A stretch of DNA of 64,000 nucleotides, taken from positions 186,001-250,000 of IMG/VR virus record IMGVR_UViG_3300045135_002615; one strand, 5' to 3'. The translations under genes were made by a program, and so were the position numbers. A model generated the notes under the pieces. It saw only the letters and a list, made by a program, of their open reading frames with translations. It searched no databases and was not told the origin of the DNA. Shown here piece by piece: positions 4,836-62,930 of this stretch. Position 1 is the first letter of the stretch, and the number at the start of each line of letters is the position of its first letter.

Positions 4836-4872
4836 CTGAGGTGCATGGGAGATATTCACATAGGTGGTCACC

Positions 4873-6492
4873 ATGAAGATAGCACATCAGATTTCAGACC
4901 TAGAGTTAAGACTCGCGAATCTTGAGAAAGAAGCGGGCATTGGATCATGGGTGGCAGAGTTCTTTGAAGACCGACCAACTTCAGCGGATTTGATACGGGG
5001 TAAGTACTTCTCTAAAGCTAACATCTCAGAGGTAAAGATAGATAACCTCATCTTGGACGGTAAAGACTTCAGGGGTGCTAACTTTCATCGCTCTTCAATG
5101 AAGTCCACCAAGGCAAAGGGAGCGTCTTTTAAGGGGGCGGGTATGTCGTGGGTAGACCTGAGTGGGTCTGTCTTTAATGGGTGTGACTTTACGGGCGTTG
5201 ATTTCAGGTTTGCCAACTTGAACAATGTCACGTTCAATGGGTGTTCCTTGAAAGGTGTGAAGCTCCACTCTTTAAGGGGTGCCGTCGGCGTTAAAATACT
5301 CAACAGCAATATAGAGGGCTTGACCATCATTGGAGGTGTTTTTAAGAGCCCTATACTCCCTCCCCTTAAGGGGGCATCCTTAAAGGGGGCTTCTTTTGAA
5401 GATTGTGCTCTTTCAGATGTAGAGAGTCCTGTCTCCTGTTCGTTTTACAATTGTGAGATAAATGGTCTGACGGGTGATGTCTTGAGTTCTAAGACGAATC
5501 GGTGTAAGGTTAAGGGTCTTAACCTTACCTCAGCCCAGAACACTCTATTTAAGGGTCTGATTGTGGAGGGTAAGGCTAAGATCAATAAGGGTGTTTCTCT
5601 TAGGTTCTCAGGTGTTCAGTTTATGGGTCCTAGTTTGACTCTAAATTTAATTAGTTCAGTGTTGTATGGTGTGACCTTTAGCAAGTGCTTCGTCTCCAAT
5701 ACCAACATCAAGGACTCAAAAGGAAAGATCGTTATCAGGAGTTGCGAGGGACTTGTTGATTTTAGAAACTGCTCTTTCCCGAACTCTCGGATCGAGAAGT
5801 GTAAAATATCAATGGGTGTCACTGACTTGGACTTGAGTGGTTCTCAGATTGTTAATAATGATCTGAGGTTCACAGGGGCTTCTGATTTAGATGTGACGGG
5901 TGCTGACCTTTCAGGCTCAGAGATTAGCGGGCTCATATACTCCGCAGAGATGAACCCCTCAGATTTTGATCAGGCTCTCATGTCTTTACGAGGTATTCTT
6001 GATGACCCAGGTACACTTAAGGGGTACATGGGTCTAGTCAAAACGATGCACCAAACAAAGGCGATCAAAGCAGAAGTCATTGAGAGAATGGAACGTCATT
6101 ATGACAAAAAGTTCACATCTCTCCGCCCTGAAAAGGAAGAGAAGCTCTTTGTGTTCATCTCTTATCTCAAGTATATAGACTCAGAGCTAAGCCTGATAAG
6201 AGAACTTAGTGGACCCCAACCCCATATTGAGAGCATTGAAAAAATGAATGACCTCCTTGAAGAGAGTACTTCAAACTCTCACAAGAAAGTAGACATTCTT
6301 TTAGGTATCTATCAAGACTATAGTGTACAAGAGCTCTCAGACCTCCTCACTGAAAGAGGGATGAGAAATAGATTACCCTCTGAAGGGCGATCTCTTGACC
6401 TCATATTCCTTAGAGTTGCTATGTTAGCTCTTAATGTTAATGAAAGAGAGCTCATCAAATATCTCAAGGAAGTCCGACCCCTATTTAAGTGA
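4873..6492 (+). CDS. Pentapeptide-repeat protein with N-terminal coiled-coil tag
   Basis: DFRGANF/SFKGA/DLSGS repeats; leader QISDLELRLANLEKEA. Confidence 0.8.
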   Translation: MKIAHQISDLELRLANLEKEAGIGSWVAEFFEDRPTSADLIRGKYFSKANISEVKIDNLILDGKDFRGANFHRSSMKSTKAKGASFKGAGMSWVDLSGSVFNGCDFTGVDFRFANLNNVTFNGCSLKGVKLHSLRGAVGVKILNSNIEGLTIIGGVFKSPILPPLKGASLKGASFEDCALSDVESPVSCSFYNCEINGLTGDVLSSKTNRCKVKGLNLTSAQNTLFKGLIVEGKAKINKGVSLRFSGVQFMGPSLTLNLISSVLYGVTFSKCFVSNTNIKDSKGKIVIRSCEGLVDFRNCSFPNSRIEKCKISMGVTDLDLSGSQIVNNDLRFTGASDLDVTGADLSGSEISGLIYSAEMNPSDFDQALMSLRGILDDPGTLKGYMGLVKTMHQTKAIKAEVIERMERHYDKKFTSLRPEKEEKLFVFISYLKYIDSELSLIRELSGPQPHIESIEKMNDLLEESTSNSHKKVDILLGIYQDYSVQELSDLLTERGMRNRLPSEGRSLDLIFLRVAMLALNVNERELIKYLKEVRPLFK

Positions 6493-9553: not shown

Positions 9554-9565
9554 AGGAGGTCAACT

Positions 9566-19558: not shown

Positions 19559-20671
19559 ATGACCATGTCAGACATCTTCGATAAGATTACAAAAGACTTT
19601 CTACGCTCAAAGAGAGCTAACTTTGCTCAACCCCTTCGTCTCCAACCTGACTACGGCGAGAGGCAGGCTGAGCTTGACATCCAAGCACGCTTCCATGAAG
19701 GACCTCAAGGTCGCAAGGAGTTTAAGGAATGGATGGGAGATCAACCTAAAGATTTCCAAGAGGAGTGGGAAGCGAACACTGAGGAGTATGGGGATAAGTT
19801 CAAGAAGGCACGCTTCCATGAAGGACCTCAAGGTCGTAAAGAGTTTAAGGAATGGATGGGAGATCAGCCTGAAGATTTCCAAGAGGAGTGGGAGGCGAAT
19901 ACAGAGGAGTATGGGGATAAGTTCAAGAACGCCTCCGACTTCTTTGCTGAAGATCACCTACCTGGCTCATACATGAGCCGTCAGAATCTAAGAGACATTA
20001 ATGACATGTCTGAATTCATCGAGGAGGACATTGGAGAGGAGGAGCTAGAGGATTGGGTTGAGGATAAGATTTCCCATGCTCATGCTGACCTTAATGATGT
20101 GGCTCGTTATAGGGGCTATCGTGACCGCCACACTGAAGAGACGTTCAAGCAAGCAGCTACCTTCTTGGGTGGAGGTATTGAGAGCGATCTTTATGACGAG
20201 TATGACTTCGATGAGTTTGAAGATATGCCCATGTCACGCACAGCGGCAGCTTCGGGTCTTTATGGGTACACCAAGAGAGTTCAAGGGGACGTTGAGTCTG
20301 CTATCCGTAAGCTACAGAAGAAGGTGGACAGCCTAGCTCGTTTCGTAGAGTCTAAGCACCCTGAAGCGGGCTCATACTTTTCTGCAAGAGCAGAGAACGC
20401 AACTTGCCCCGCTTCAAAAGCGTTGAGTAGAGCGTGCTTGATTAACAAGGCACCGAGTAGAGTGCTCAATGGTCCTTACGGCTTTAAGTCTTCTGTGGCT
20501 AAGGCTTCTCAGAAGGCGATCTCGGACTTGATCCTTTACTCAGGCGAGGTTGCACATGGTCTATACCTCAAGGATAGAGCACATGTACCTTTCTTGAAGG
20601 AGCACCTTCGTAGGAAGCGTTGCCCTCTGACACGGCTCATTATCGAAGCTCTCCCTTCCGATGCTATCTAA
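19559..20671 (+). CDS. Putative internal virion polyprotein
   Basis: Modules separated by KRA/KKA/KNA/KQA/RTA; LEDWVEDKI domain; motif at 19511-19523. Confidence 0.75.
   Translation: MTMSDIFDKITKDFLRSKRANFAQPLRLQPDYGERQAELDIQARFHEGPQGRKEFKEWMGDQPKDFQEEWEANTEEYGDKFKKARFHEGPQGRKEFKEWMGDQPEDFQEEWEANTEEYGDKFKNASDFFAEDHLPGSYMSRQNLRDINDMSEFIEEDIGEEELEDWVEDKISHAHADLNDVARYRGYRDRHTEETFKQAATFLGGGIESDLYDEYDFDEFEDMPMSRTAAASGLYGYTKRVQGDVESAIRKLQKKVDSLARFVESKHPEAGSYFSARAENATCPASKALSRACLINKAPSRVLNGPYGFKSSVAKASQKAISDLILYSGEVAHGLYLKDRAHVPFLKEHLRRKRCPLTRLIIEALPSDAI
19685..19930 (+). repeat. Two tandem 123-bp (41-aa) repeats
   Basis: ARFHEGPQGRKEFKEWMGDQPxDFQEEWEANTEEYGDKFK twice. Confidence 0.95.
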
Positions 20672-27911: not shown

Positions 27912-29354
27912 ATGGCATTCTTAAGATACGCTAAGGCTAATGTAGTGCGACCTGAACTACATGGTCTTGAATGGGATAAGGTCAGGGTCGCTTCGGGAGA
28001 CAAGAAGCTAAACAAGTCTCTCAAGAAGCAAGCTGAGGATATCCTTGGAGAGCCCTTCACACCCGAAAGATTCCTCCTTACTCACTCTACTATTGTTTGC
28101 TCCGTAGACGCAGTCTCTCCTCCCAATACCAAAACAGGTAATGTTGTTGAAGAAGGGGCTAAGGTAAATCGCAAGTATGCCGATTACAGAGTGTCCCCTG
28201 AGACGGATAAGTTTATCAACAACAACCTTGATTGTTGGTCACGGGGGGTCATCAAGAAGTCTTATCAGACTTTCATTGGGGCACATAACTTCGTGGAGCA
28301 CATCCAAGTTGAGGAACTCTCTAAAGGTCGCATTATTGATGCTGTTCTCCGAGATATTGGTGATAGCCTCTATGTGGATATACTTGTAGCCACAGACCGC
28401 AAGCACAAGGACCTCGTTGATCAAATCGTCTCAGGTAAGATGAACTCCATGAGTATGGGTTGTAGCGTCGAGTTTACGATTTGTACTAAATGCGGGCACG
28501 TTGCCGCTGATGAGACTGAGATGTGTCCCCATGTTAAGTATGAGAAGGGCAACACCTTCTTTGACGAACAGGGTAATAAGCATAGGGTTGCGGAGCTCTG
28601 TGGGCATGAAGATGTAGGAGGTACCGCAGGTGTGACCTTCATTGAAGCCTCATGGGTTGCCACGCCCGCATTCCCTGGTGCAGTAGCCCGCAACACCATT
28701 GAAATCCCATCAGATGAACCTGCTAAGGTTGCAAGCCTTAATGAAGTCCCTGAGAAGTGGATTGCCAAAGCCGCCTCTCTTGTTGACTCTCCTTGGTATG
28801 ACCCTAATGGAGTGCTTAGTAAGGTCGCAGGTCCCTTTGACGACATGGGTGGTGATGACGATAGTGACGGAGATAAAAAAGAAGAAAAGCCCGACCCCTC
28901 ACTACTCTCTCAACTTGAAGGTGTCTATGAAAAGGCGGTTATTGATCGTTTCCGTCAAAAGCTTGAGAATGAGATGAAGAAGGAGAAGGCTCAGGAAGCC
29001 ATGAACCCTCCTATCAGTAAGTCTACTGTCGAGCAAAATGACACCGTCATCAAAGAAGGTCATGTGAACGCAGCTCAGTATCTTAACGCTCTAGAGATCG
29101 CTGTTAAGACCGCCTCTTCAACTGAGGAAGCTGTGTTGAACCTTACTTTGGTCAACAATCACTATGGGGTTAATATCCCTCCTCATGTGTACAAGCTGGC
29201 TTCTAAGCTCGGCTCAACCTCAAACCATAAAGATGTAGATAGTTTCCTTAAGAAGGCTTCTACTCTACATGGTAAAATCTTGTCTAGTTCTGAAGCTCGC
29301 ATCCTAGTTAGGCTAGCTAAGATACTCTCAATCAACTCTTTCGGGCAGAGGTAA
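27912..29354 (+). CDS. Prohead (capsid maturation) protease
   Basis: FVEH, SMSMGC, Zn insert CTKC..C.H, FIEASWVATPA (HK97/assemblin-type pattern); position before scaffold and capsid. Confidence 0.8.
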   Translation: MAFLRYAKANVVRPELHGLEWDKVRVASGDKKLNKSLKKQAEDILGEPFTPERFLLTHSTIVCSVDAVSPPNTKTGNVVEEGAKVNRKYADYRVSPETDKFINNNLDCWSRGVIKKSYQTFIGAHNFVEHIQVEELSKGRIIDAVLRDIGDSLYVDILVATDRKHKDLVDQIVSGKMNSMSMGCSVEFTICTKCGHVAADETEMCPHVKYEKGNTFFDEQGNKHRVAELCGHEDVGGTAGVTFIEASWVATPAFPGAVARNTIEIPSDEPAKVASLNEVPEKWIAKAASLVDSPWYDPNGVLSKVAGPFDDMGGDDDSDGDKKEEKPDPSLLSQLEGVYEKAVIDRFRQKLENEMKKEKAQEAMNPPISKSTVEQNDTVIKEGHVNAAQYLNALEIAVKTASSTEEAVLNLTLVNNHYGVNIPPHVYKLASKLGSTSNHKDVDSFLKKASTLHGKILSSSEARILVRLAKILSINSFGQR

Positions 29355-29389
29355 AGTCCTGCCCCGTCATGTTAGAAAGGAATTGCCTT

Positions 29390-31036
29390 ATGTCTAGGTA
29401 TGACCGTTCAAATAAGTCTCGCAGGGCTATGGCTACACGTCGCCGTCGCTTTGCAAACTCTTCTATCCCTGGCTCAGACAACCTAGGTTGGGAGCACTTC
29501 GGACACCCCGCTGCTGGCGAGCAACCTGCTGTCGATGAGTATGGTTTTGATAGCGAGTTCGGTGAGGGCGTTCGCAAGGGTCCTTACAGCTCTGGTGCCG
29601 CTCCTGCCTCTTATGGTTGGTCTCCTGAGCACCCCGCTGCTTCAGACATGGTTCGTGAGGATTACGCCATGACTGAGACCCTCCGTAACGAGAACCTCAA
29701 GAAGGCTATGGAGCGTAAGGCAGCTAAGTGCATTGAGATTGCTGAGTCACGCCTCGGTAAATATGCGAGTGCCTCTGAGATTGAGGATCTTGCTCTTCGT
29801 TTCATGGATCTCCCCAACAGCGTTGTGAATGGTCGTGTCGCTTCTCTTCGTAATGCTGATAACGCTGTTCAGATGAACACAGGCTATGAGGGTCTTGACT
29901 TCACAGGTCCTGGTAACGCAGGTTCTGATCTTGAGGCAGACGAGTGGATGTCTGACGAGTTCGAGGCTGACATGGACATGATGGCTGATGAGCTTGAGGC
30001 AGACGAGTGGATGTCTGATGAGTTCGAGGCTGACATGGACATGATGGCTGATGAGTTCGAGGCTGATGAGCTTGAGGCTGACATGGACATGATGGCTGAG
30101 GACATTGAGGCACATGATCTCTTTGACGAGTATGACCTCGATGGTGATGACCTCATCTCCCGTGATGAGTGGGGCGGTAGCATGGGGGCGTTCGATGTAA
30201 TGGATCTTGATGAGGATGACTTCCTCTCTCGTGATGAGGTTGCTATGGGTCTAGGTGACTCTTTCGGCAACCCTTCACAGGCGGAGATGCTCGCTGAGGA
30301 GATTTCTAATCTTAAGCAAGCTAATGCCCGCCTCGCCCGTCAGGTTCGTAAGCTTGCCGATAACGCAGTTCAGCAAGCTACGGACTACACCGTAGAGGAC
30401 TTCAGCGATCCTATCGACACTACACCTGAGTCTGAGGAGGGTGAGGGCACTCCTACTCAGCGTCTTGCCCGTCTTGAGCGTCTCGCATCTGTACTCGCAG
30501 ATTACATGGGAGAGCTTGAGGCTGAGGAGGAGATGTCTGACATGAATGATCCTCACTACGGCTACTCAAAGGCAGCAGGTGATGAGCCCGAAGAGGAAGA
30601 GGGTGACGATGAGGATCTTGAGGAAGATGCCAAGAATGTTGCAGAGACCGCAGAAGATCCTAAGTCTGAGAAGAAGGCTTCTGAGGATCTTGAGGAAGAG
30701 GAGGCTGAGGAAGAGGAGACTGAGTCTGAGAAGAAGGCTTCTGACGACAACATGGGTCTCGATGTAGAGGACGGTGACATGGAGATTGATCCTCGTCTTG
30801 CTTCTATCTTCACCGCTTCTGACGAGGAAGAGGCTGAGGAAGAGGAGGCTGAGGAAGAGGAGACTGAGGGAGAGGAGCCTAAGTCTGAGAAGAAGGCTTC
30901 TTACAAGCCCGCTATCAATACTCGTCAGGCAAGTGTTAAGACCCTCGGTAACATCAGCCGTGAGGCTTCTGCTTCTTCTGATGAGCTCAGCAAGCTTTGG
31001 GCTTCAGCTCCTGACGTGAGCAAGTTCTTCGGTTAA
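29390..31036 (+). CDS. Capsid scaffolding protein with EF-hand pair
   Basis: Highly acidic, coiled coils, between protease and capsid genes; many [KR]xAS sites. Confidence 0.75.
   Translation: MSRYDRSNKSRRAMATRRRRFANSSIPGSDNLGWEHFGHPAAGEQPAVDEYGFDSEFGEGVRKGPYSSGAAPASYGWSPEHPAASDMVREDYAMTETLRNENLKKAMERKAAKCIEIAESRLGKYASASEIEDLALRFMDLPNSVVNGRVASLRNADNAVQMNTGYEGLDFTGPGNAGSDLEADEWMSDEFEADMDMMADELEADEWMSDEFEADMDMMADEFEADELEADMDMMAEDIEAHDLFDEYDLDGDDLISRDEWGGSMGAFDVMDLDEDDFLSRDEVAMGLGDSFGNPSQAEMLAEEISNLKQANARLARQVRKLADNAVQQATDYTVEDFSDPIDTTPESEEGEGTPTQRLARLERLASVLADYMGELEAEEEMSDMNDPHYGYSKAAGDEPEEEEGDDEDLEEDAKNVAETAEDPKSEKKASEDLEEEEAEEEETESEKKASDDNMGLDVEDGDMEIDPRLASIFTASDEEEAEEEEAEEEETEGEEPKSEKKASYKPAINTRQASVKTLGNISREASASSDELSKLWASAPDVSKFFG
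29933..30100 (+). repeat. 63-bp tandem repeats (EADEWMSDEFEADMDMMADEL)
   Basis: Units start at 29933 and 29996, plus a partial third. Confidence 0.9.
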
Positions 31037-31187: not shown

Positions 31188-31775
31188 ATGGCTCTACTTG
31201 GACAAGCTAGTGGTGGGTTCACTGAGAGCAGCTCTGCTCTGCGTATTCTGCACGTTGGTGTTCGTAACACCCTCGGTCAGCTCACCGCAGATAGCTTCAC
31301 TCAGTCTAACCCCAAGTTTACAACCGATGTTGACCGCATCTCAGCCGCACCTGGCCTTCTAACAGGCGTCTTCGGTGTCCTTAGCGGTTCTATCGCCTTC
31401 ACTCGCGGTGACGAGGGTGCGAGCTTCCACGGTGGTCCTACCGCCGCAGCAGGTCGTGCTCACACTGAGCGTGTTCTCGGCGTGTTCATCAACAACGCAA
31501 GCGGTAACGCTTTCGAGAACCAGCCTGGCGTTGCAAGCAACAAGGGTCCTTATGTCTCTGCACAGGGTAGCTACGCTAACCGCCTCTATGAGACATCTCA
31601 GACCGGTGCTGATGTTGCTCTTACCTATGCTTCAGGTGACAGCCTCTACGCTTCTATCAATGGTTTCCTTACCAATGACACCAACCAGCGTCACACGGAT
31701 ACCACTGAGATCGCCATCCTCAAGATTGCTCCCGACTCTACGTCTGACGAGCTAGTTTACGACCAGCGTATCTGA
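31188..31775 (+). CDS. Capsid decoration/cement protein
   Basis: Gly/Ala/Ser-rich, VLGVFIN...ASNK, immediately upstream of the capsid gene, biased codons. Confidence 0.7.
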   Translation: MALLGQASGGFTESSSALRILHVGVRNTLGQLTADSFTQSNPKFTTDVDRISAAPGLLTGVFGVLSGSIAFTRGDEGASFHGGPTAAAGRAHTERVLGVFINNASGNAFENQPGVASNKGPYVSAQGSYANRLYETSQTGADVALTYASGDSLYASINGFLTNDTNQRHTDTTEIAILKIAPDSTSDELVYDQRI

Positions 31776-31795: not shown

Positions 31796-32674
31796 ATGAG
31801 CAATACCGTAGATAACAGCGTTAAGAACAAGATCATCAGCGACTTCATCAAGACCCCTCAGGGTCGTGCTAAGCTCGCTGCTTCAATGACTCAGCCCCTC
31901 CGCCTCCGCCGTGACTATACATCAGTCGGCCGTAAGACCTTCCAGGTCGAGCAGCTTCCTGATGGAGCACTCCCCATCTACGACAAGGATCCCGATGTGA
32001 CCGCATTTGTCGTTGGTGAGGAAGGCGAGAACATCCTCGCTATCACCAAGCCACGCCGTGTGATCTTCCCTCTCTTCGAGATCGCATCTAACCCTGAGAT
32101 TCCCCTCACACAGATCAAGGAGCGTAGATTCGACCTCATCGAGCGTGCTCAGGATCTCGCTAGGGCTCAGATTCAGGCGGCTGAGGACGAGCGTGTGTTC
32201 GCTATACTCGATGCCGTTGCAGCTAACGGCTTCGACAGCGTTGCAGGTCAGACTAACGCTGACATCCCTGTCATCGCTCCTCTCAATGGTGCTGTCCTCG
32301 CTGACGCATTCGCACAGATCGAGCGTCACGACCTTCGCGTTGCCCGCGTATTCATGAACGCTCGTGACTACGCTGACATCCGTAAGTTCGGCCGTGATAT
32401 TCTCGACATCGAGAGCCAGGCTGCTCTCCTCAAGACTGGTCTTCAGGCTACTCTTTGGGGTGCTCAGATCATCACATCACGTCTCGTGCCTGTCGGTACG
32501 GTGTACGTCTGCTGTGAGCCTGAGATGTTCGGACGTATCCCCGTTCGTACTGAGCTCACCGTCCTCTCTGCTGACGATCCTAAGGCTCGTACAATTGGCT
32601 TCAGCGTCTTTGAGAATTTGGGCATTGGTGCCTACAACCCTCGCGGTCTAGTCCGCCTCACTGTTACTCGCTAA
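31796..32674 (+). CDS. Major capsid protein (HK97 fold)
   Basis: 292 aa; strongest codon bias; module position; GRAKLAASM..PLR...DY..VGRK, WGAQI, C-terminal NPRG; followed by a terminator. Confidence 0.88.
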   Translation: MSNTVDNSVKNKIISDFIKTPQGRAKLAASMTQPLRLRRDYTSVGRKTFQVEQLPDGALPIYDKDPDVTAFVVGEEGENILAITKPRRVIFPLFEIASNPEIPLTQIKERRFDLIERAQDLARAQIQAAEDERVFAILDAVAANGFDSVAGQTNADIPVIAPLNGAVLADAFAQIERHDLRVARVFMNARDYADIRKFGRDILDIESQAALLKTGLQATLWGAQIITSRLVPVGTVYVCCEPEMFGRIPVRTELTVLSADDPKARTIGFSVFENLGIGAYNPRGLVRLTVTR

Positions 32675-33895: not shown

Positions 33896-34177
33896 TCAGT
33901 AGAGGGTCTGAGAGTAGGCTCGGAGAAGTCCGAGCTTCTCCTCCGCCTCCAAAATGGCGAGCCAAGAATAAAATGCCTCATAACTGTCTTCCACTTCAAT
34001 GATCTCGCAATCAGTTAGCTCAAGGGCTTCCCTTGTGCTCTCGTCTGATCGCCCGCTCAGGCTTACTCGCTCCCTGGCGAGCTCGCCTGAGTAACAGATC
34101 TCGATGGTGGTGTCTTGGGCGGAGGCGACTGAGGAGAGGGCGGTGAGGGCGAGAAGTGTAGTTAGAATGGTACGCAT
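33896..34177 (-). CDS. Small secreted acidic protein, paralogue of 33375-33707
   Basis: Signal peptide ending ASA|Q; two conserved Cys. Confidence 0.78.
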   Translation of the reverse strand: MRTILTTLLALTALSSVASAQDTTIEICYSGELARERVSLSGRSDESTREALELTDCEIIEVEDSYEAFYSWLAILEAEEKLGLLRAYSQTLY

Positions 34178-34299
34178 TGTTGTTTCCCTTTTGTGTGTTG
34201 TTGTTGCTTACAGGTATCAATGCCATCAGGGGGGGGTGTTTTTTTGGTTATTTATATATATACATTTGCATTAACCACCCTCTATTGGAGCAAAAAAAT

Positions 34300-34815
34300 A
34301 TGAGACACTTAACAGCAAGTCAGAAGATCGCTCACCTTGAGCATCGCCTCGCTCGTCTTGAAAGAAGAGCTACGCATTGGACTGATGTCTACCATCCGAG
34401 TGAGATGGTAGACGGCTACGTTGATGATATGGGCTACGAGAAGTACCCACCCAGCTATAGCCAAGGACCGGTATGTGACTCTATAGCAAGAGAGATGAGT
34501 CGCCGCCTGAAAAGGAAGGGTTATAATATCCAACATATGCCTGATTGGGTTGGGTATAGGATTCACCTCCCTTTGAATGGGATCACTTATGAGATGATAA
34601 ACTCAGATACTGATCCAAGTCTACCTCTCTGTAAAGAGTTAGTTCTCCAGGTAATGAAGGACGCAGGTCTTAAGGGTCATGTGTACTACAGGAGAGGGTC
34701 TCACTACTACAGGAAAGAGCTTGCGGGGGGTCGCTGTCTCCTTAGTATTAGTTGCTCACAAGATGAGGGTCTGAGCTTTGATGTAGACAGGGTGATAACC
34801 CGACGTAGGAGATAA
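34300..34815 (+). CDS. Hypothetical protein with coiled-coil tag
   Basis: GGAG RBS; MRHLTASQKIAHLEHRLARLERRA. Confidence 0.8.
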   Translation: MRHLTASQKIAHLEHRLARLERRATHWTDVYHPSEMVDGYVDDMGYEKYPPSYSQGPVCDSIAREMSRRLKRKGYNIQHMPDWVGYRIHLPLNGITYEMINSDTDPSLPLCKELVLQVMKDAGLKGHVYYRRGSHYYRKELAGGRCLLSISCSQDEGLSFDVDRVITRRRR

Positions 34816-34868: not shown

Positions 34869-35243
34869 ATGTCCATGAGACACTTAACAGCTAGTCAAAA
34901 AATCGCTCAACTTGAATCCCGTATCGCCCGTCTAGAGAAGCAAGCCTCTTTGAGAAGAGGTCTCGACAGGGAGGAGGAAACCGTCTTAGATGAAGTAATC
35001 CACCACTACAGACTCAGGCCACGAGACTATGAAGATGTCGAAATTAGTATTGAGGATCAGGTAGGGCGTGGGGAAGATAGGATCGTGCTCTATGAGGTGT
35101 CTCTTTTCAAAGAAGACGGGGATAGCTTTACTTGCTATGTCCTTTATGACGCTTACGAAGAATTGGTGGAAGGGTTTTACGATTACCAAGATGATTATGA
35201 AGCCCAAAGAGCCTTTGACTCACTAGTAGAGCGACACGCATAA
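34869..35243 (+). CDS. Acidic hypothetical protein with coiled-coil tag
   Basis: MRHLTASQKIAQLESRIARLEKQAS; motif at 34823-34835. Confidence 0.8.
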   Translation: MSMRHLTASQKIAQLESRIARLEKQASLRRGLDREEETVLDEVIHHYRLRPRDYEDVEISIEDQVGRGEDRIVLYEVSLFKEDGDSFTCYVLYDAYEELVEGFYDYQDDYEAQRAFDSLVERHA

Positions 35244-35420: not shown

Positions 35421-36035
35421 ATGTCATTCACCTACTATGATGAGTACGCTGATTTTGAGCCTGCTCTTATCCCTGTTGATTTAGAGTTTTTCGCCACCGT
35501 ACAACGAGAGCTCACCTTGGACTTCCAAGTGTCCTCATTTTGCGACCTTTACAAGTCCGACCCCAATGATCAAAACCTGCCTTGCGTCTACCCTGCCCTC
35601 CGCCTGATTGGTGAGGATGTTGACTTTGAGAAGATCAAGCTCAACGTAGAGGGTGCTAACCTCGTGGCGACAGACTCCTATATGGAGGATGATTGTCGCG
35701 TGATGGTTTGGGTCTTTGCCCCGACCTCAACAGGCTATGCACAGATTCAGTATGGTGCAGCCTTAGAGGATAAGGCAAAGCTCACATGGTTCTCAACAGA
35801 CGACAACTCTTACTTGGTCTGCGACTTTGATGAGAACCCCGTAAGTGTCACGGATGCGAAGCTCGGTCTTTACCAAGAGATTTACACTCCTGAGAAGAAG
35901 GAGCTACGAGAGGACAACCGCAGGATTTTAGAGTTGCTGAAGAATACGGATAACGGTTTAGAGGTGTCCTCTTACCTTGAGTTGATTCAGCAAAATCTTG
36001 AGAAGATGAAAGAGTGTAACGGTTACACTTGCTGA
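35421..36035 (+). CDS. Acidic hypothetical protein
   Basis: GGAG RBS, 204 aa. Confidence 0.7.
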   Translation: MSFTYYDEYADFEPALIPVDLEFFATVQRELTLDFQVSSFCDLYKSDPNDQNLPCVYPALRLIGEDVDFEKIKLNVEGANLVATDSYMEDDCRVMVWVFAPTSTGYAQIQYGAALEDKAKLTWFSTDDNSYLVCDFDENPVSVTDAKLGLYQEIYTPEKKELREDNRRILELLKNTDNGLEVSSYLELIQQNLEKMKECNGYTC

Positions 36036-36418
36036 TCGGGTTCTGTACCCTCATCTTCAACAGAAGCCTCAGCTTCCTCAGAGGGAGTTGGGGCTTCTTC
36101 GTTTTCTGAGAACAGGGACGCCATCATCTCAGCCATCTTATCTTCGTCCATATCTTCCATTCCCTCGCCCCCAAAGAGACCCGCAAGGGGGTTATCTTGA
36201 CCTTGTAGCATCTCCTCGATGCCACCCTCTGTCTCGGCAGCCTTCATGAGCTTCTCCATATCAAGGTTTCCACCCATAAGGAGCTTCATCATCTCCATGA
36301 TGTCGTTCATGCCGAGTGGCTTCTCAAGCTCTTTACGCTCACGGGCTTTACGCTCCTTGCGGCGTTGCTTGATACGGATCTTCTTCTTGTGTGCGTTACG
36401 TTGTTTCTTGTTCATCAC
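36023..36418 (-). CDS. Hypothetical protein with basic N-terminus and Met/acid-rich C-terminus
   Basis: AAGGAGG RBS. Confidence 0.7.
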   Translation of the reverse strand: MMNKKQRNAHKKKIRIKQRRKERKARERKELEKPLGMNDIMEMMKLLMGGNLDMEKLMKAAETEGGIEEMLQGQDNPLAGLFGGEGMEDMDEDKMAEMMASLFSENEEAPTPSEEAEASVEDEGTEPDQQV

Positions 36419-36494
36419 ATACCTCCTTATCGGTGTCTTGTCTTATACCGATAGTATAAAGAGGTATATGGCAACACAGTACGGAGAGCGAACA

Positions 36495-37094
36495 ATGATA
36501 GAGATTAAGATAGGAGATTGCGTAGATCGCCTCAAAGACCTAGAGGACAACTCCGTTGACGCAATCATCTCAGACCCACCTTATGGTGTGAAGTATATGG
36601 AGAGTGGGTGGGACGATATAGGAGAAGGCTCGCAACAGAGAGAGTGGCACAGAGCTTGGTTGAAGGAAGCTCATAGGGTTCTTAAATGTGATGGTGTCCT
36701 CAAAGCGTTCTCTAGTGCTAAAACCCTGCATCATTTAACCTCTGCTATGGTCGAGGTAGGATTCGTAAACCTCTTAGTCGAGGCATGGGTTTACACAAGT
36801 GGTATGCCGACAGGAAACTACGATATGGCTAAAGGCATCGAGGCAACTATCCTGTTTGGAGACTCGAATAAATCAACATTCAAAAAACTTAAAGGGACTC
36901 GTAAAGAGGGCAAAACGGGGTATGCCAAACTTAGAGTAGAGCAAGGTACTAGAGCCACAGATTATGGTCTTTCATCTAGTGCATTTGACCTTGAGCCTCA
37001 AACTAAAGAGGGATCTCTTTACATGGGCTATGGTACTACCCTTAAGAAGTCATGGGAACCTATTTGTATCGGGGTTAAGAGATGTCACTCTTAA
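36495..37094 (+). CDS. Split methyltransferase, catalytic (DPPY) subunit copy A1
   Basis: SDPPY ... GYGTTLKKSWEPI; no FxGxG motif. Confidence 0.85.
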   Translation: MIEIKIGDCVDRLKDLEDNSVDAIISDPPYGVKYMESGWDDIGEGSQQREWHRAWLKEAHRVLKCDGVLKAFSSAKTLHHLTSAMVEVGFVNLLVEAWVYTSGMPTGNYDMAKGIEATILFGDSNKSTFKKLKGTRKEGKTGYAKLRVEQGTRATDYGLSSSAFDLEPQTKEGSLYMGYGTTLKKSWEPICIGVKRCHS

Positions 37095-53194: not shown

Positions 53195-53245
53195 TAGTCT
53201 TTTTATAGGTACTCTCTCCTATCAATCCACGATAGGAGAATACCT

Positions 53246-54856
53246 ATGTATCCACGTCGCCGTAGGCTGTCTCGCACAGCTTCATTTAATCGCGTTCGCA
53301 CCGCTTCAACTTCATTACTTCGTCAGCTTCACAAGATTGCGAGTCCTCAAGAGATTCATCGCAAGTACAAGGGCATCGTCTCTCAGTTCATGTCTGATAA
53401 GTATACTGCGATGGACGATGCTATCCATGATACAATCTTTGATCCTAATGAAAAGAAGCTAGGGACTCTCAGCCTTCGTGACCTCGTAGAGCTAAAGACT
53501 GAGCTCTCAGATGCGGTTGCCGAGCTTAATGATGCTTGGAACTCAGCTAAAGCTAATGCTCCTAAGATCAAGGCGATGCTTCAGAGGGAGATGGGTAGTG
53601 CCTCCGAGGATGACCTTGAGGTTCTTGAGGGGTACTATGACGAAATCCAAAGTTTCCTTCGTAATGGACACCCTCTTGCAACATACAACCCTTATGCTGA
53701 CTTCCTTGTGAAGATTGATGAGGAGATTGAGGAGAGGCGTACCGAGGGTGAGGACGATGCTAGGTGGAGACGTGAGCTCACCGAACTAATTGCTGACTTT
53801 GAGGATAGCTTGGCAGAGCTTGAGGTCATGGATAGAGAGGTTCGTAGCTATGCCGATCTTCGCCCTCTTAAGATGGTGAAGGTTGATGTTGATATGCTCC
53901 TTGACACTACGGGACTCGGATCAAGTTTCCCTGATCGCTATTCACGGGGCATACTATCAAGTATAAATATGGACGCCGCTCGTGCTTCAATCGCAAAGAA
54001 GAGGCACGAGCTGCTCAACCTCCAAAAGGCACTTCCAAGTGTCAAGGTCGTAGAGCGTAAGCTCAAGGAGTTTGAGAGCGGTGTTCGTGAGAGACATGAT
54101 CTCATCCGCCGTGCGAAAGAGGTTGATGCTCACACATGGCAGATGAACATTGGTCCTGATGCAGAGAAACTCAAGGGGAAGACCGAACTACTAGAGGCTC
54201 GTTCATCAGCTGTCAGAGCTGCAATTACGCTCTATCTGAGAGACCTCAAGATTTTCTCCATTACCCTAGCGGGTCAGATTACACGTCTTGAGAAGGTTTA
54301 TGAGTCATCTCGTGATGTTGAGATCAATGCGAACCTTGCTTCTGAGAGGAAGATTAAGTATTTGAAGTCTTCTCTCAGAGACATTCAAACTGTCCTCAAT
54401 CGTGGAGTAAAGTCCTCACGAGACCTTAAGGCTCTTACTGAGCGGTTTGAAAAGTTAGAGGCTCAGGCACAAGCAGGTGGGTCATCCGTGGTTCGTGAGA
54501 TTGCACATCAGCTTCGTGATACAAAGGCAGCTCTCAAGTCCGTTGTGGTCGATGAGGGACTCATGGGTAAGTTTAGAGGTCTCTTCTCTCGCAAGGCTTC
54601 TTATGAGTACATGGCAGAGATGGATCGTGTAGCCTCTGATATGGGTTACATGGGTTCAGACATAGACATGATGGCAGACGAGTGGATGTCTGACGATCTT
54701 GAGGCTGAATTCATGGGAGAGGATCTTGAGGCCGACTTCATGGCTGAGATGTATGTCGAAGGTGATGACTTCGAGGCTATGGAGGTGATGGCACCTCGCA
54801 GGGCTTCAATGAACCGTAGGGCTTCACGCCTCGCCCGTAGACATCTTAGGGGCTAA
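53246..54856 (+). CDS. Coiled-coil putative inner-head protein with scaffold-like acidic tail
   Basis: RTAS twice, KIAS, RKAS, RVAS, RRAS twice; DMMADEWMSD; motif at 53194-53206. Confidence 0.8.
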   Translation: MYPRRRRLSRTASFNRVRTASTSLLRQLHKIASPQEIHRKYKGIVSQFMSDKYTAMDDAIHDTIFDPNEKKLGTLSLRDLVELKTELSDAVAELNDAWNSAKANAPKIKAMLQREMGSASEDDLEVLEGYYDEIQSFLRNGHPLATYNPYADFLVKIDEEIEERRTEGEDDARWRRELTELIADFEDSLAELEVMDREVRSYADLRPLKMVKVDVDMLLDTTGLGSSFPDRYSRGILSSINMDAARASIAKKRHELLNLQKALPSVKVVERKLKEFESGVRERHDLIRRAKEVDAHTWQMNIGPDAEKLKGKTELLEARSSAVRAAITLYLRDLKIFSITLAGQITRLEKVYESSRDVEINANLASERKIKYLKSSLRDIQTVLNRGVKSSRDLKALTERFEKLEAQAQAGGSSVVREIAHQLRDTKAALKSVVVDEGLMGKFRGLFSRKASYEYMAEMDRVASDMGYMGSDIDMMADEWMSDDLEAEFMGEDLEADFMAEMYVEGDDFEAMEVMAPRRASMNRRASRLARRHLRG

Positions 54857-61229: not shown

Positions 61230-62930
61230 ATGGACCCTATCGACCGACTAATCTCAAGCCTCAACAAGAAGGTTATCCGTAAACTCGCCGCTGAAGACCT
61301 CCCTACCTTTGAGGAAGCGATCAAGGGAAAGACCTTCAAGAACCCTAATACGGGTAATGACGTTCAGTTTGGATCACTCCCTGCCGAAGAGCAGAAGAAG
61401 ATCCGTGCTGAATATGACAAGAAGGTGGAGGAGCTTGAAGGAGAGGGTAAGGGTAAGGGAGAGAAGAAGCCTCTCAAAAAGATGACCAAGGTTCAATTGC
61501 TTGATCAGCTTGAAGGGGATAAGGACTTCTCAGGGGTTGATCTCACTAAGTTTAAAGACTTTGATTGGTCAAGTGTGGATTTGAGGGGTGCTAACTTCTC
61601 AGGTTCAGACCTGACAGGTGCGTACTTTGGTGTTGGTTCTAGACTCGAAGGAGCGAACTTTGAGGGTGCTAATCTTTCAGGTGTCGAGTTCAGAGGGAAA
61701 AAGGGTTATGGCGTGAGCCCGTACAGCGATACTCCAGATACTGTCCATAAAAACGTCAACTTCAAGGGTGCTAATCTTGAAGGTGCGGAGATGTCTTTTC
61801 TTCGTTTTGAAAATTCAGATTTAAGCGGTGCTAATCTAAAGGGTGCTGAGCTTGACGCGGTGATGATAGATAGAAAATGCACCGTAAGAGGTGCTGACTT
61901 TGAGGGTGCAACCTTTCATGCCTCCCAATTCAATGGCGTCAATCTGAAGGGTGTGAACTTTGCGGGAGCAACCATAAAGTCTGGGGGTGGATATAATAAC
62001 AGTAGAAGAACCTTCGACAGAGCGAACATCTCAGGTGCAGACTTCTCAGGTGCAAACTTCGCCTTCGGTGACGCTTTTAGGTTTGGTGGTAACTTTGGGA
62101 AACCCGCCAAAATAAATGGAGCTAAGTTTAGATTTGATGTTCTAGAAAGTGTGGGAACTAAAGAATTTAAAGCATTTGGCTTTGATAAAGACAATCCTCC
62201 TGAAGGCTTGTCCGATAAGGTTCTACATAAAATGGTTGGTGGTAGGGAGTACCTAGAGTATAGGGAGGCTGAAGAAGATAAAGCTGAAGAAGCTAAAGCT
62301 AAGGCTGATGCGGAAGCCAAAGCTAAAGCTGATGAGGAAGCCAAAGCCAAAGCTAAAGCTGATGAGGAAGCCAAAGCCAAAGCTAAGGCTGATGAGGAAG
62401 CTAAAGCTAAGGCTGATGCTGAAGCCAAAGCTAAGGCTGATGCTGAAGCCAAAGCTAAGGCTAAAGCTGAAGCCAAAGCTAAGGCTGATGCTGAAGCCAA
62501 GGCTAAGGCTGATGAGGAAGCCAAAGCTAAAGCTAAGGCTGATGAGGAAGCCAAAGCCAAGGCTAAGGCTGATGAGGAAGCCAAAGCTAAAGCTGAGGAA
62601 GAAGAGAAGATCAAAGAGAACTCAAAACGTCTTAAAGACCTTGAGTCTAAGATTAAAGCCGTTAAGAAGAAAGATGATCTCATTGACCTTGTGTCTGAGC
62701 TAGGTAGGATGAAGGGTCAACTCTCAAACGCTAAGTTTAAGGACAAACTAGAGTCTGAGATGAAGGCTGTCGATAAAGCTGTACAAAACGCGAAAGAGAA
62801 CACGTCTTTCACGGGTAGGATTAAGAGCTTCTTCGGTCTAGGTAAAAAGGCAAGGCTCAAGGAAGCCCGACTCTTGCTCAATGGACTTCAGGATGAGATC
62901 GAGCATCTCAAGAGGGACATCAACCGCTGA
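61230..62930 (+). CDS. Pentapeptide-repeat protein with TolA-like Ala/Lys/Glu helix
   Basis: GANF/GANL/GADF repeats; KAKADEEA repeats; RKLAA and KKAR sites. Confidence 0.85.
   Translation: MDPIDRLISSLNKKVIRKLAAEDLPTFEEAIKGKTFKNPNTGNDVQFGSLPAEEQKKIRAEYDKKVEELEGEGKGKGEKKPLKKMTKVQLLDQLEGDKDFSGVDLTKFKDFDWSSVDLRGANFSGSDLTGAYFGVGSRLEGANFEGANLSGVEFRGKKGYGVSPYSDTPDTVHKNVNFKGANLEGAEMSFLRFENSDLSGANLKGAELDAVMIDRKCTVRGADFEGATFHASQFNGVNLKGVNFAGATIKSGGGYNNSRRTFDRANISGADFSGANFAFGDAFRFGGNFGKPAKINGAKFRFDVLESVGTKEFKAFGFDKDNPPEGLSDKVLHKMVGGREYLEYREAEEDKAEEAKAKADAEAKAKADEEAKAKAKADEEAKAKAKADEEAKAKADAEAKAKADAEAKAKAKAEAKAKADAEAKAKADEEAKAKAKADEEAKAKAKADEEAKAKAEEEEKIKENSKRLKDLESKIKAVKKKDDLIDLVSELGRMKGQLSNAKFKDKLESEMKAVDKAVQNAKENTSFTGRIKSFFGLGKKARLKEARLLLNGLQDEIEHLKRDINR
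62280..62600 (+). repeat. AKAKAD(E/A)E low-complexity tandem repeats
   Basis: Repeated GCTAAGGCTGATGAGGAAGCCAAA units. Confidence 0.95.

What the first reader, a model, noticed from the sequence alone, without database searches (positions are those of the whole stretch)
54600..54856. Scaffold repeat copied into a distant gene
24 nt are identical between 29935-29958 and 54673-54696 (ADEWMSD), within a similar Asp/Glu/Met-rich tract. The 53246 protein also starts with an Arg-rich stretch like the scaffold. This is direct evidence that scaffold sequence is grafted onto another late gene about 25 kb away.
Basis: seen in the sequence. Interest (0 to 1): 0.6.

Follow-up and report, generated by a model that had tools for sequence, protein, structure and literature searches.

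The report
Scaffold-like tag on a distant phage protein
In a marine jumbo phage related to Bacillus phage G, a protein encoded 25 kb from the head genes carries a copy of the scaffolding protein's own acidic, methionine-rich repeat. The copy is flanked by likely protease sites, and it most plausibly acts as a removable tag that loads the protein into the assembling capsid.

Summary
Positions 29935-29958 and 54673-54696 are identical (24 nt, ADEWMSD), and no codon shuffle of the tract reached this length (0 of 3000, maximum 18).

The window lies in a 296.6 kb marine jumbo phage related to phage G. Its head module runs protease 27912, scaffold 29369, decoration-like ORF 31188, capsid protein 31796.

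The distant gene, 53246-54856 (called p53 here), encodes a 536-aa protein. It has an Arg-rich N-terminus, a helical core (about aa 34-448) and a C-terminal acidic/Met tract (aa 453-517). The tract is bracketed by [RK]xAS motifs.

- Only three relatives are known (81, 80 and 45% identity). All keep the tract and the motifs, so this is not a recent graft.
- Among 125 scaffolds of this phage group, the p53 tract matches its own genome's scaffold best.
- Two other genomes each have an unrelated protein carrying a copy of its own scaffold type's variable segment. In both, the amino acids are conserved but synonymous sites have diverged.
- [RK]xA[SN] is about 10-fold enriched in scaffolds, the protease and p53, and absent from the capsid protein.

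Best reading (confidence about 0.5): a scaffold-mimicking, protease-removable capsid-loading tag. "Late gene" is unverified, and no virion data exist.

The parts
53246..54856 (+). Gene 'p53': a 536-aa protein of unknown family that carries the scaffold-like tract.
   Evidence: ORF. AGGAG at 53234-53238, 7 nt before the ATG. Orthologs P0002, P0003 (80-81% identity) and P0097 (45%) start at the same Met. No Pfam or PHROG family.
53246..53344 (+). N-terminal Arg-rich segment (aa 1-33) with three [RK]xAS motifs (RTAS, RTAS, KIAS). Proposed propeptide.
   Evidence: A12-S13, A20-S21 and I31-A32-S33-P34 are invariant in the 45%-identical ortholog.
53345..54589 (+). Helical core (aa 34-448), the proposed mature protein.
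   Evidence: AlphaFold2 predicts it as all-helical, with pLDDT mostly 70-90. It has no [RK]xAS motif inside. There are no significant fold matches.
54590..54601 (+). RKAS motif (aa 449-452) immediately before the tract. Proposed cleavage site.
   Evidence: R449, A451, S452 and Y453 are invariant across the family.
54602..54796 (+). Acidic/Met-rich tract (aa 453-517), the scaffold-like tag. It contains the 24-nt identity at 54673-54696.
   Evidence: Predicted disordered, pLDDT below 50. Repeat number varies among orthologs.
54797..54853 (+). Basic C-terminal tail (aa 518-536) with two RRAS motifs.
   Evidence: R518, A520 and S521 are invariant.
29369..31036 (+). Scaffolding protein gene, lying between the protease and the decoration/capsid genes. 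The true start is probably Met8 at 29390.
   Evidence: Position in the head module. Relatives conserve the N-terminus from MSRY.... There are 11 [RK]xA[SN] motifs.
29924..30103 (+). The scaffold's acidic/Met repeat tract: 63-nt units at 29926, 29989 and 30037. It contains the other copy of the 24-nt identity at 29935-29958, and a second EWMSD at 29998.
   Evidence: (D4, D9). The tract is hypervariable across 125 scaffolds, while the capsid protein is 90-97% identical.
30890..31033 (+). KKAS motif (aa 508-511) followed by the conserved 44-aa C-terminal tail of the scaffold. Proposed maturation site and capsid-binding tail.
   Evidence: K501, K502, A503, S504 and the tail are invariant in 14 scaffolds. 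The analogy is to the herpesvirus scaffold M-site (PMC4498786).
27912..29354 (+). Head maturation protease (480 aa).
   Evidence: phrog_18299, head maturation protease, E = 5.8e-15. Six [RK]xAS motifs against 0.65 expected.
31796..32674 (+). Major capsid protein (292 aa). The ORF at 31188-31775 before it sits where phage G has its decoration protein gp26.
   Evidence: phrog_2522, E = 1e-51. 38% identical to phage G gp27 and 47% to Tunturi_5. Gene order as in those phages.

Best explanation
The 536-aa product of 53246-54856 is made as a precursor. Both of its ends imitate the phage's own scaffolding protein: an Arg-rich N-terminus, and a C-terminal acidic/Met-rich repeat tract built from the same units as the scaffold's hypervariable tract (DMDMMAD, EWMSD, DLEAD).

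The tract acts as a loading tag. By associating with the like tract of the scaffold (repeat with repeat, or acidic tract with Arg-rich ends), it draws the protein into the scaffolding core of the procapsid. The head maturation protease then cuts at the [RK]-x-A-S motifs that bracket both terminal segments. This is the same kind of Ala|Ser site that releases herpesvirus scaffolds. What remains is the helical core (about aa 34-451), inside the head or free.

Shown here:
- the homology of the tracts;
- the match of each tag to its cognate scaffold type;
- three independent cases in three genomes;
- the enrichment, placement and conservation of the motif.

Inferred:
- binding to the scaffold;
- packaging into the head;
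- cleavage at the motifs;
- the fate and function of the core.
For: 1. The tract is rare and specific. An acidic/Met composition screen was run on seven whole genomes of this phage group. In each it finds the scaffold, plus only p53 and a small ORF in G000, one ORF in G007 and a weak one in G003.

2. Tags match their cognate scaffold. Against 125 distinct scaffolds:
- the p53 tag scores best with its own scaffold (104; next 93; median 52);
- the orthologs' tags also score best with this scaffold, though their own scaffolds are unknown (P0002: 181 against 128; P0003: 129 against 107);
- EWM occurs only in this scaffold and the p53 family among 93 proteins.

3. There are independent cases.
- G007: a pentapeptide-repeat protein has a 47-aa tail sharing the 9-aa run MAMMDDHMG with its own scaffold type. 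No shuffle of 1500 exceeded 7 aa, while the nucleotide run is only 14. Its orthologs stop exactly where the tail begins.
- G004: ORF P0101 copies its own scaffold type's box plus MWAD/ELEAD units. Identity is 25 of 29 aa but only 65 of 87 nt, so the match is kept at the protein level.

4. The protease-site signature. Counts of [RK]xA[SN]:
- scaffolds: mean 9.4 against 0.98 in shuffles (n = 125);
- p53: 7 against 0.9 (0 of 2000 shuffles), all in aa 1-33 and 449-527;
- protease: 6 against 0.65;
- capsid protein: 0.
The motifs are conserved in the 45%-identical ortholog.

5. The scaffold tract is hypervariable while the capsid protein is 90-97% identical. This argues that the tract's partner is the scaffold itself rather than the shell.

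6. Sea and estuary runs that hold p53 relatives also hold 90-96% identical scaffold relatives that keep the EWMSD copy. In run X3 the scaffold contig continues with YMA, like that run's p53 tag unit DYMAD.
Against: - There is no direct evidence that p53 is in virions or is cleaved.
- The gene sits among nucleotide-metabolism and replication genes, not structural ones.
- p53 is absent from close relatives with 94-97% identical capsid proteins, so it is dispensable.
- Only 3 of 9 genomes examined show a tagged non-scaffold protein. The tag is C-terminal in two and N-proximal in one, so the 'system' is loose.
- [RK]xxS is also the consensus of basophilic protein kinases.
- The cognate scaffolds of P0002 and P0097 are unknown, so co-variation within the p53 family rests on one 10-nt contig end.
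- The phage has a different shared N-terminal leader on at least 10 other ORFs. That leader could be the real targeting signal.
Confidence: 0.5

Rival explanations
1. p53 is itself a minor scaffolding or core-building protein that helps form or size the very large procapsid. On this reading it is not cargo, and it shares the tract because it co-polymerises with the main scaffold.
For: Its layout parallels the scaffold: Arg-rich N-terminus, long helices, an acidic tract, and motif-rich ends. The tract matches the cognate scaffold.
Against: It is absent from complete relatives with nearly identical capsid proteins and similar genome sizes. It lacks the scaffold's conserved N-terminal domain and its C-terminal capsid-binding tail. 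No similarity remains once the tract is removed. The other two tagged proteins are unrelated to it, and one is a pentapeptide-repeat protein.
Confidence: 0.17
2. The tract is a recombination-prone, minisatellite-like sequence that spreads between genes by illegitimate recombination or gene conversion. It is tolerated as a disordered acidic tail with no targeting role.
For: Copy number and unit order vary between orthologs. The 24-nt identity, and a 26-nt identity between the L085 ortholog's tag and this scaffold, are DNA-level features. The tail is predicted disordered.
Against: The tract is retained in frame in all four family members down to 45% identity and is bracketed by invariant motifs. 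In G007 and G004 the scaffold-like segments keep amino-acid identity while synonymous sites have diverged, which indicates selection on the peptide. Each tag matches its own scaffold type.
Confidence: 0.13
3. The tract has an intrinsic biochemical activity that each protein needs on its own, with no contact between the two proteins. Candidates are binding of divalent or soft metal ions (Asp/Glu/Met, and His in some lineages) or acting as a DNA mimic or polyanion inside the head.
For: In the scaffold the tract lies next to an EF-hand pair. The G007-type tract (DHMGMED repeats) resembles Met/His-rich metal-binding repeats; this resemblance is from general knowledge and was not tested.
Against: A generic activity does not need lineage-specific motif matching (EWMSD, MAMMDDHMG, MWAD), which is what is seen. 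It also does not explain the flanking [RK]xAS clusters.
Confidence: 0.1
4. The [RK]xAS motifs are phosphorylation sites of a basophilic Ser/Thr kinase that regulates assembly proteins, not protease sites. This is a rival for that sub-claim only.
For: Arg or Lys at position -3 from Ser is the classical basophilic kinase consensus (general knowledge). The motifs lie in disordered, basic regions.
Against: Ala at -1 is invariant, which kinases do not require. The motif is enriched in the protease itself and sits just before the scaffold's conserved C-terminal tail, as the A|S maturation site does in herpesvirus scaffolds. No search for a kinase gene in this genome was made.
Confidence: 0.1

Closest known systems
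T4 capsid targeting sequence (CTS) on internal proteins IPI-III (reviews found, e.g. PMC9958956, PMC9026906; details from general knowledge)
   Same: A short peptide on otherwise unrelated proteins directs them into the scaffolding core of the prohead. The prohead protease then removes it, and the cargo stays in the head and is injected.
   Different: The T4 CTS is about 10 N-terminal residues and is cut at L/I-x-E. It is not a copy of the scaffold's own sequence. Here the tag is 40-110 residues, repeat-based and usually C-terminal, it is homologous to the cognate scaffold's hypervariable tract, and it is flanked by [RK]xAS.
Herpesvirus UL26/UL26.5 (protease sharing the scaffold's sequence) and scaffold M-site cleavage (PMC4498786)
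   Same: A non-scaffold function enters the procapsid because it carries scaffold sequence. The scaffold is released by cleavage at an Ala|Ser site about 25-40 residues from its C-terminus. The phage scaffold here has an invariant KKAS 44 residues from its end.
   Different: In herpesviruses (and, from general knowledge, lambda C/Nu3) the sharing comes from nested in-frame genes at one locus. Here separate genes 25-110 kb away carry diverged copies. Neither the protease fold nor its specificity was tested here.
Propeptides of phiKZ/SPN3US head proteins (PMC5694885, PMC7411985, PMC10052503, found)
   Same: Jumbo phages in which many head and ejection proteins are trimmed by the prohead protease at a short consensus.
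   Different: The consensus differs (S/A/G-x-E, from general knowledge) and so does the capsid lineage. No reported homology between those propeptides and the scaffold repeat is known to me.
Encapsulin cargo-loading peptides and engineered P22 scaffold-fusion cargo (general knowledge)
   Same: A terminal tag on cargo gives encapsidation in an HK97-fold shell. The P22 system fuses cargo to a scaffold fragment, which is what nature appears to have done here.
   Different: Encapsulin tags bind the shell directly, are conserved and are not cleaved. The P22 fusions are man-made.

Membership tests
Scaffolding protein family of this phage-G-like group | Gene lies between the head protease and the decoration/capsid genes. 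| tested here: not met
   p53 lies 22 kb downstream of the head module, next to thymidine kinase.
Scaffolding protein family of this phage-G-like group | Conserved N-terminal domain (PGYDNLGW...FGHPA...) and conserved C-terminal tail (VKTLGNIS...LSKLW..APDVSKFF). | tested here: not met
   Both are invariant in 14 scaffolds and absent from p53. The profile comparison with the tract removed finds nothing.
Scaffolding protein family of this phage-G-like group | Acidic/Met-rich repeat tract. | tested here: met
T4-type capsid targeting sequence | N-terminal peptide of about 10 residues, removed at an L/I-x-E site. | tested here: not met
   The tag is C-terminal, about 65 aa long, and flanked by [RK]xAS.
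T4-type capsid targeting sequence | Sufficient to load a protein into the prohead core. | not testable with these tools
   Needs virion proteomics or reporter fusions.
Substrates of the head maturation protease | Carries the protease's cleavage motif at accessible sites. The motif here is inferred, not known. | tested here: inconclusive
   [RK]xA[SN] is enriched 7- to 10-fold in the scaffold, the protease and p53 and is absent from the capsid protein. Cleavage at it is unproven.
Substrates of the head maturation protease | Processed termini observed in virions. | not testable with these tools
   No proteomic data exist for this uncultured phage.
Pentapeptide-repeat proteins (the G007 tagged protein only) | Pfam Pentapeptide repeats above the curated threshold. 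| tested here: met
   PF00805, 139.9 bits against a cut-off of 20.2.

The most novel reading that the evidence does not exclude
Phage-G-like jumbo phages have a natural, modular and evolvable capsid-loading system. Any protein can be sent into the procapsid by acquiring a copy of the phage's own hypervariable scaffold repeat, bracketed by Ala|Ser protease sites. The tag works by like-with-like association with the scaffold, so tag and scaffold must co-evolve. This would make loading lineage-private and keep out the cargo of co-infecting relatives.
Probability: 0.3. Interest if true: 0.75.

Novelty: new variant of a known kind. Interest (0 to 1): 0.6.

Why it matters
How jumbo phages choose which proteins go into the head is largely unknown outside T4 and the phiKZ group. 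Such proteins include ejected anti-defence proteins. If the reading here is right, three things follow.

- Cargo could be recognised in uncultured phage genomes from sequence alone, as a copy of the cognate scaffold's variable repeat plus flanking [RK]xAS.
- A specificity for the protease of the phage G lineage would be proposed.
- There would be a natural counterpart of the scaffold-fusion trick used to load P22 particles.

It would also give a function to the otherwise puzzling hypervariability of the scaffold tract. All of this can be tested with virion proteomics on the cultured relatives, phage G and Tunturi_5.

Tried and rejected
- Complex prediction of scaffold aa 8-260 with p53 aa 440-536: no verdict (score 0.23, mark 0.34). 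It is not used as evidence either way.
- Fold searches of the p53 model against BFVD and PDB, and the ESM Atlas look-up, gave only generic coiled-coil rows and nothing significant.
- Pfam and PHROGs gave nothing for p53, its two upstream neighbours, or eight other motif-rich ORFs.
- tblastn of p53 against 50,697 phage records found no match. The IMG/VR pattern scan found none. LR745208.1 has none.
- Looking for a syntenic p53 next to thymidine kinase in four relatives showed that synteny is not kept.
- A JGI metagenome scan for a close scaffold relative, meant to find the cognate scaffold of P0002, found none.
- A DEWMSD-coding pattern in IMG/VR found four unrelated contigs.
- The idea that p53's C-terminal 150 aa is a larger scaffold fragment was rejected. 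A first profile comparison gave 92% probability. With the tract removed from both alignments nothing remained, and each flank alone gave nothing.
- The protease searched by sequence against PDB gave no meaningful hit, so an assemblin-like fold is not shown.
- Raw local scores of whole scaffolds against all ORFs are dominated by Glu/Lys-rich coiled-coil noise. Only the G004 hit was real.
- The phage G multi-omics paper gave no cleavage-site information.
- A TATCAAT promoter-like motif upstream of p53 is not specific enough to date its expression.

Full report
**What the window is.** The window is bases 186001-250000 of a 296,642-bp virus record that is judged 95% complete. Runs holding it are seawater and estuary metagenomes. 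Its 292-aa major capsid protein (31796-32674; phrog_2522, E = 1e-51) is 38% identical to Bacillus phage G gp27, 47% to Tunturiibacter phage Tunturi_5 and 88% to the 485-kb uncultured phage LR745208.1.

The head module runs as follows:
- protease at 27912-29354 (phrog_18299);
- a 555-aa acidic protein at 29369-31036, in the scaffold position;
- a 195-aa ORF where phage G has its decoration protein gp26;
- the capsid gene.

Tunturi_5 has the same gene order. The group is abundant: 573 IMG/VR stretches encode a relative of this capsid protein, and the 80 best are 90-97% identical.

**The observation.** 29935-29958 and 54673-54696 are identical over 24 nt and encode ADEWMSD in frame. With one 15-nt gap the similarity continues upstream through D(M/I)DMMAD.

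- In 3000 codon shuffles of the distant tract, the longest nucleotide match to the scaffold tract was 18. A 7-aa match arose in 0.2% of shuffles.
- Composition-adjusted BLASTP gives E = 6e-7 over about 50 residues.
- A reversed scaffold profile, which has identical composition, gives nothing.
- Given the shared peptide, identical codons have P of about 0.008.
- Used as a query on the whole genome, the scaffold tract finds only itself and this site.

One limit applies. Real scaffolds of the group share motifs, so one other scaffold of 125 also reaches a 7-aa run with this region. The specificity lies in the full local score and in the DNA identity.

**The distant gene.** 53246-54856 encodes 536 aa. 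The long start is supported by an AGGAG 7 nt upstream and by conservation of MYPRRRR... in relatives. The automatic gene call had begun at Met49. AlphaFold2 predicts an all-helical core, with pLDDT of 70-90 for roughly aa 35-435, and an unstructured tail from 435. No family, fold or look-alike was found.

Exhaustive searches find only three relatives:
- P0002, 80% identical, on a 10-kb contig with the same neighbours;
- P0003, 81% identical;
- P0097, 45% identical, also next to thymidine kinase.

Complete relatives with 94-97% identical capsid proteins lack the gene.

**The tract is old in this family, so it is not a recent graft.** All four members carry it between two invariant blocks, FSRKASYEYMAEM and MAPR.AS. 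The number and kind of repeat units differ: there are 11-aa and 33-aa insertions in P0002, and other variants in P0097. The L085 ortholog's tag shares a different 26-nt identical run with this window's scaffold.

**Scaffold tracts are hypervariable, and tags follow their cognate type.** Across the group the scaffold diverges to about 50% identity while the capsid protein stays at 90-97%. After the conserved box TGY.GLDFTGPGN, each lineage has its own acidic/Met repeat, for example DLEADD, DHMGMED..IMAMMDD, EDLMADEDIM or DEFDMMSD.

Against 125 distinct scaffolds:
- the p53 tag scores best with its own scaffold (104; next 93; median 52);
- the orthologs' tags also score best with this scaffold (181 against 128; 129 against 107; 90 against 78);
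- EWM occurs only in this scaffold and in the p53 family among 93 proteins.

Runs that hold p53 relatives also hold 90-96% identical scaffold relatives that keep the EWMSD copy. In run X3 the scaffold contig continues with Y-M-A, the unit that fills that run's p53 tag (DYMAD). That unit is absent from both genes here. This is thin evidence, only 10 nt, but it points the right way.

**Independent cases.** I assembled nine genomes of the group from fetched stretches.

- *Composition screen.* Run on seven of the genomes, it flags the scaffold in each, and beyond it only p53 and a small ORF in G000, one ORF in G007 and a weak one in G003.
- *G007.* The flagged ORF is a pentapeptide-repeat protein (PF00805). 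Its last 47 residues share MAMMDDHMG with G007's own scaffold type, while no shuffle exceeded 7 aa. The longest nucleotide match is only 14. Its orthologs in G003 and P0100 end exactly where this tail starts, which makes it a clean terminal add-on.
- *G004.* ORF P0101, 38 kb from the scaffold, contains ADNAVQVNTGYD.GLDFTGP.N.EDEL plus MWAD/ELEAD units of its own scaffold type. Identity is 25 of 29 residues but only 65 of 87 nucleotides, and MWAD occurs in just 4 of 125 scaffolds.

In both of these cases the amino acids are kept while synonymous sites have drifted. The mimicry is therefore selected and is not merely recent DNA copying.

**The flanking motif.** Counts of [RK]xA[SN] against shuffled expectation are:

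| Protein | Observed | Expected from shuffles |
|---|---|---|
| Scaffolds (n = 125) | 9.4 (mean) | 0.98 |
| p53 | 7 | 0.9 (0 of 2000 shuffles reach 7) |
| Protease | 6 | 0.65 |
| Capsid protein | 0 | 0.3 |

In p53 all seven motifs lie in aa 1-33 and 449-527, bracketing the tract, and most are invariant at 45% identity. In scaffolds an invariant KKAS sits 44 residues before the end, ahead of the most conserved part of the protein.

This mirrors the herpesvirus scaffold, which is freed from the capsid protein by cleavage at an Ala|Ser M-site near its C-terminus (PMC4498786). I therefore read [RK]xA|S as the likely specificity of the head protease. This is an inference: the protease fold was not established, and R-x-x-S is also a kinase consensus.

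**Mechanism proposed.** The precursor p53 joins the scaffolding core through its scaffold-like tract, and possibly its Arg-rich end. The protease then removes both ends. The helical core of about 47 kDa stays in the head or is released.

The tract varies freely while the shell protein is nearly fixed. Its partner is therefore more likely the scaffold itself (like-with-like, or acidic tract with Arg-rich ends) than the shell. That would also explain why each tag must resemble its own scaffold. The pentapeptide-repeat cargo in G007 suggests injected DNA-mimic or anti-defence proteins as one use, but this is speculation.

**What weakens it.**
- There are no proteomic or expression data.
- p53 sits among thymidine kinase, a sigma-like protein, a Toprim protein and glutamine synthetase genes.
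- The tag is found in 3 of 9 genomes and at different positions in the proteins.
- A separate N-terminal leader is shared by at least 10 ORFs and may be the main targeting signal.
- Similarity between p53 and the scaffold does not extend beyond the tract.

**Verdict.** It is best filed as a new variant of capsid targeting by shared scaffold sequence. It is akin in logic to the T4 CTS and to herpesvirus UL26/UL26.5, but it is a member of neither.

Operators' notes were kept. Read laying was given 1,668 letters. No alternative genetic code was used. The large protein search was used only after the word search and family scans had left the protein open.

Noticed in passing
window 19559-20671 (+), P0102; relatives G004:194119-195582 (P0101) and G001:203724-205304: The N-terminus of this 370-aa protein family imitates the N-arm of the major capsid protein (KI..DF...QPLRL.(P/R)DY; pairwise E = 0.002). 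In this window it also has DLYDEYDFD, matching the scaffold's DLFDEYDLD (28 nt, 89%; repeat D16). The G004 and G001 members carry a scaffold box as well.
   Followed up: partly
window 34177-34815 and 34869-35243 (both +), with similar DNA repeats at 9565 and 10103; G000 5004, 19496, 75691, 81282, 83001, 103698, 148676, 149700, 167855: At least 10 ORFs begin with a shared leader, M(R)HLTASQKIAQLE.RIA.LEKQAS, which often ends in a KQAS motif. The leader is also present in G003, G005 and G007. It may be a second targeting or propeptide signal of the T4 CTS kind.
   Followed up: partly
window 30110-30268 (scaffold aa 248-300): The scaffold contains a canonical EF-hand pair (DLDGDDLISRDE and DLDEDDFLSRDE). 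The EF-hand Pfam matches are below threshold here but are recorded for many scaffold relatives. A calcium-binding scaffolding protein would be unusual.
   Followed up: partly
window 36023-36418 (-), P0096: A 131-aa ORF with a Lys/Arg-rich N-terminus and an acidic/Met-rich remainder is the only other ORF in the genome passing the tract screen. It has no homolog in six relatives. It overlaps the annotated start of 36219-37094, whose homologs align only from about aa 90, so both may be real.
   Followed up: partly
window 32829 (-), 33754 (+), 34215 (+), 45724 (-); also G000 169681 and 127821: An intergenic motif TATCAATG, then about 8-10 nt, then a run of G, often followed by T's, recurs near gene ends. 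A TATCAAT also lies 20 nt upstream of the p53 start. Whether it is a promoter or a terminator was not determined.
   Followed up: no
window 29369-29389 and 53246-53389: Automatic gene calls in the protein databases start both the scaffold (at Met94) and p53 (at Met49) too late. This cuts off the conserved Arg-rich N-termini.
   Followed up: yes
window 61230-62930 (+) and 4864-6492 (+): Two pentapeptide-repeat proteins. The first has a long (A/E)KAKAD repeat array at 62235-62658. The genome holds many pentapeptide-repeat ORFs (20 matches). None in this genome carries the scaffold-like tail seen in G007.
   Followed up: partly
G000 148676-149644 and 149700-150665 (outside the window): Tandem paralogs of about 320 aa with the RKIAHLEARLARLE leader and a C-terminal cluster of three [RK]xAS motifs (KTAS, RVAS, R(T/I)AS). 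They are further candidates for protease-processed virion proteins.
   Followed up: no
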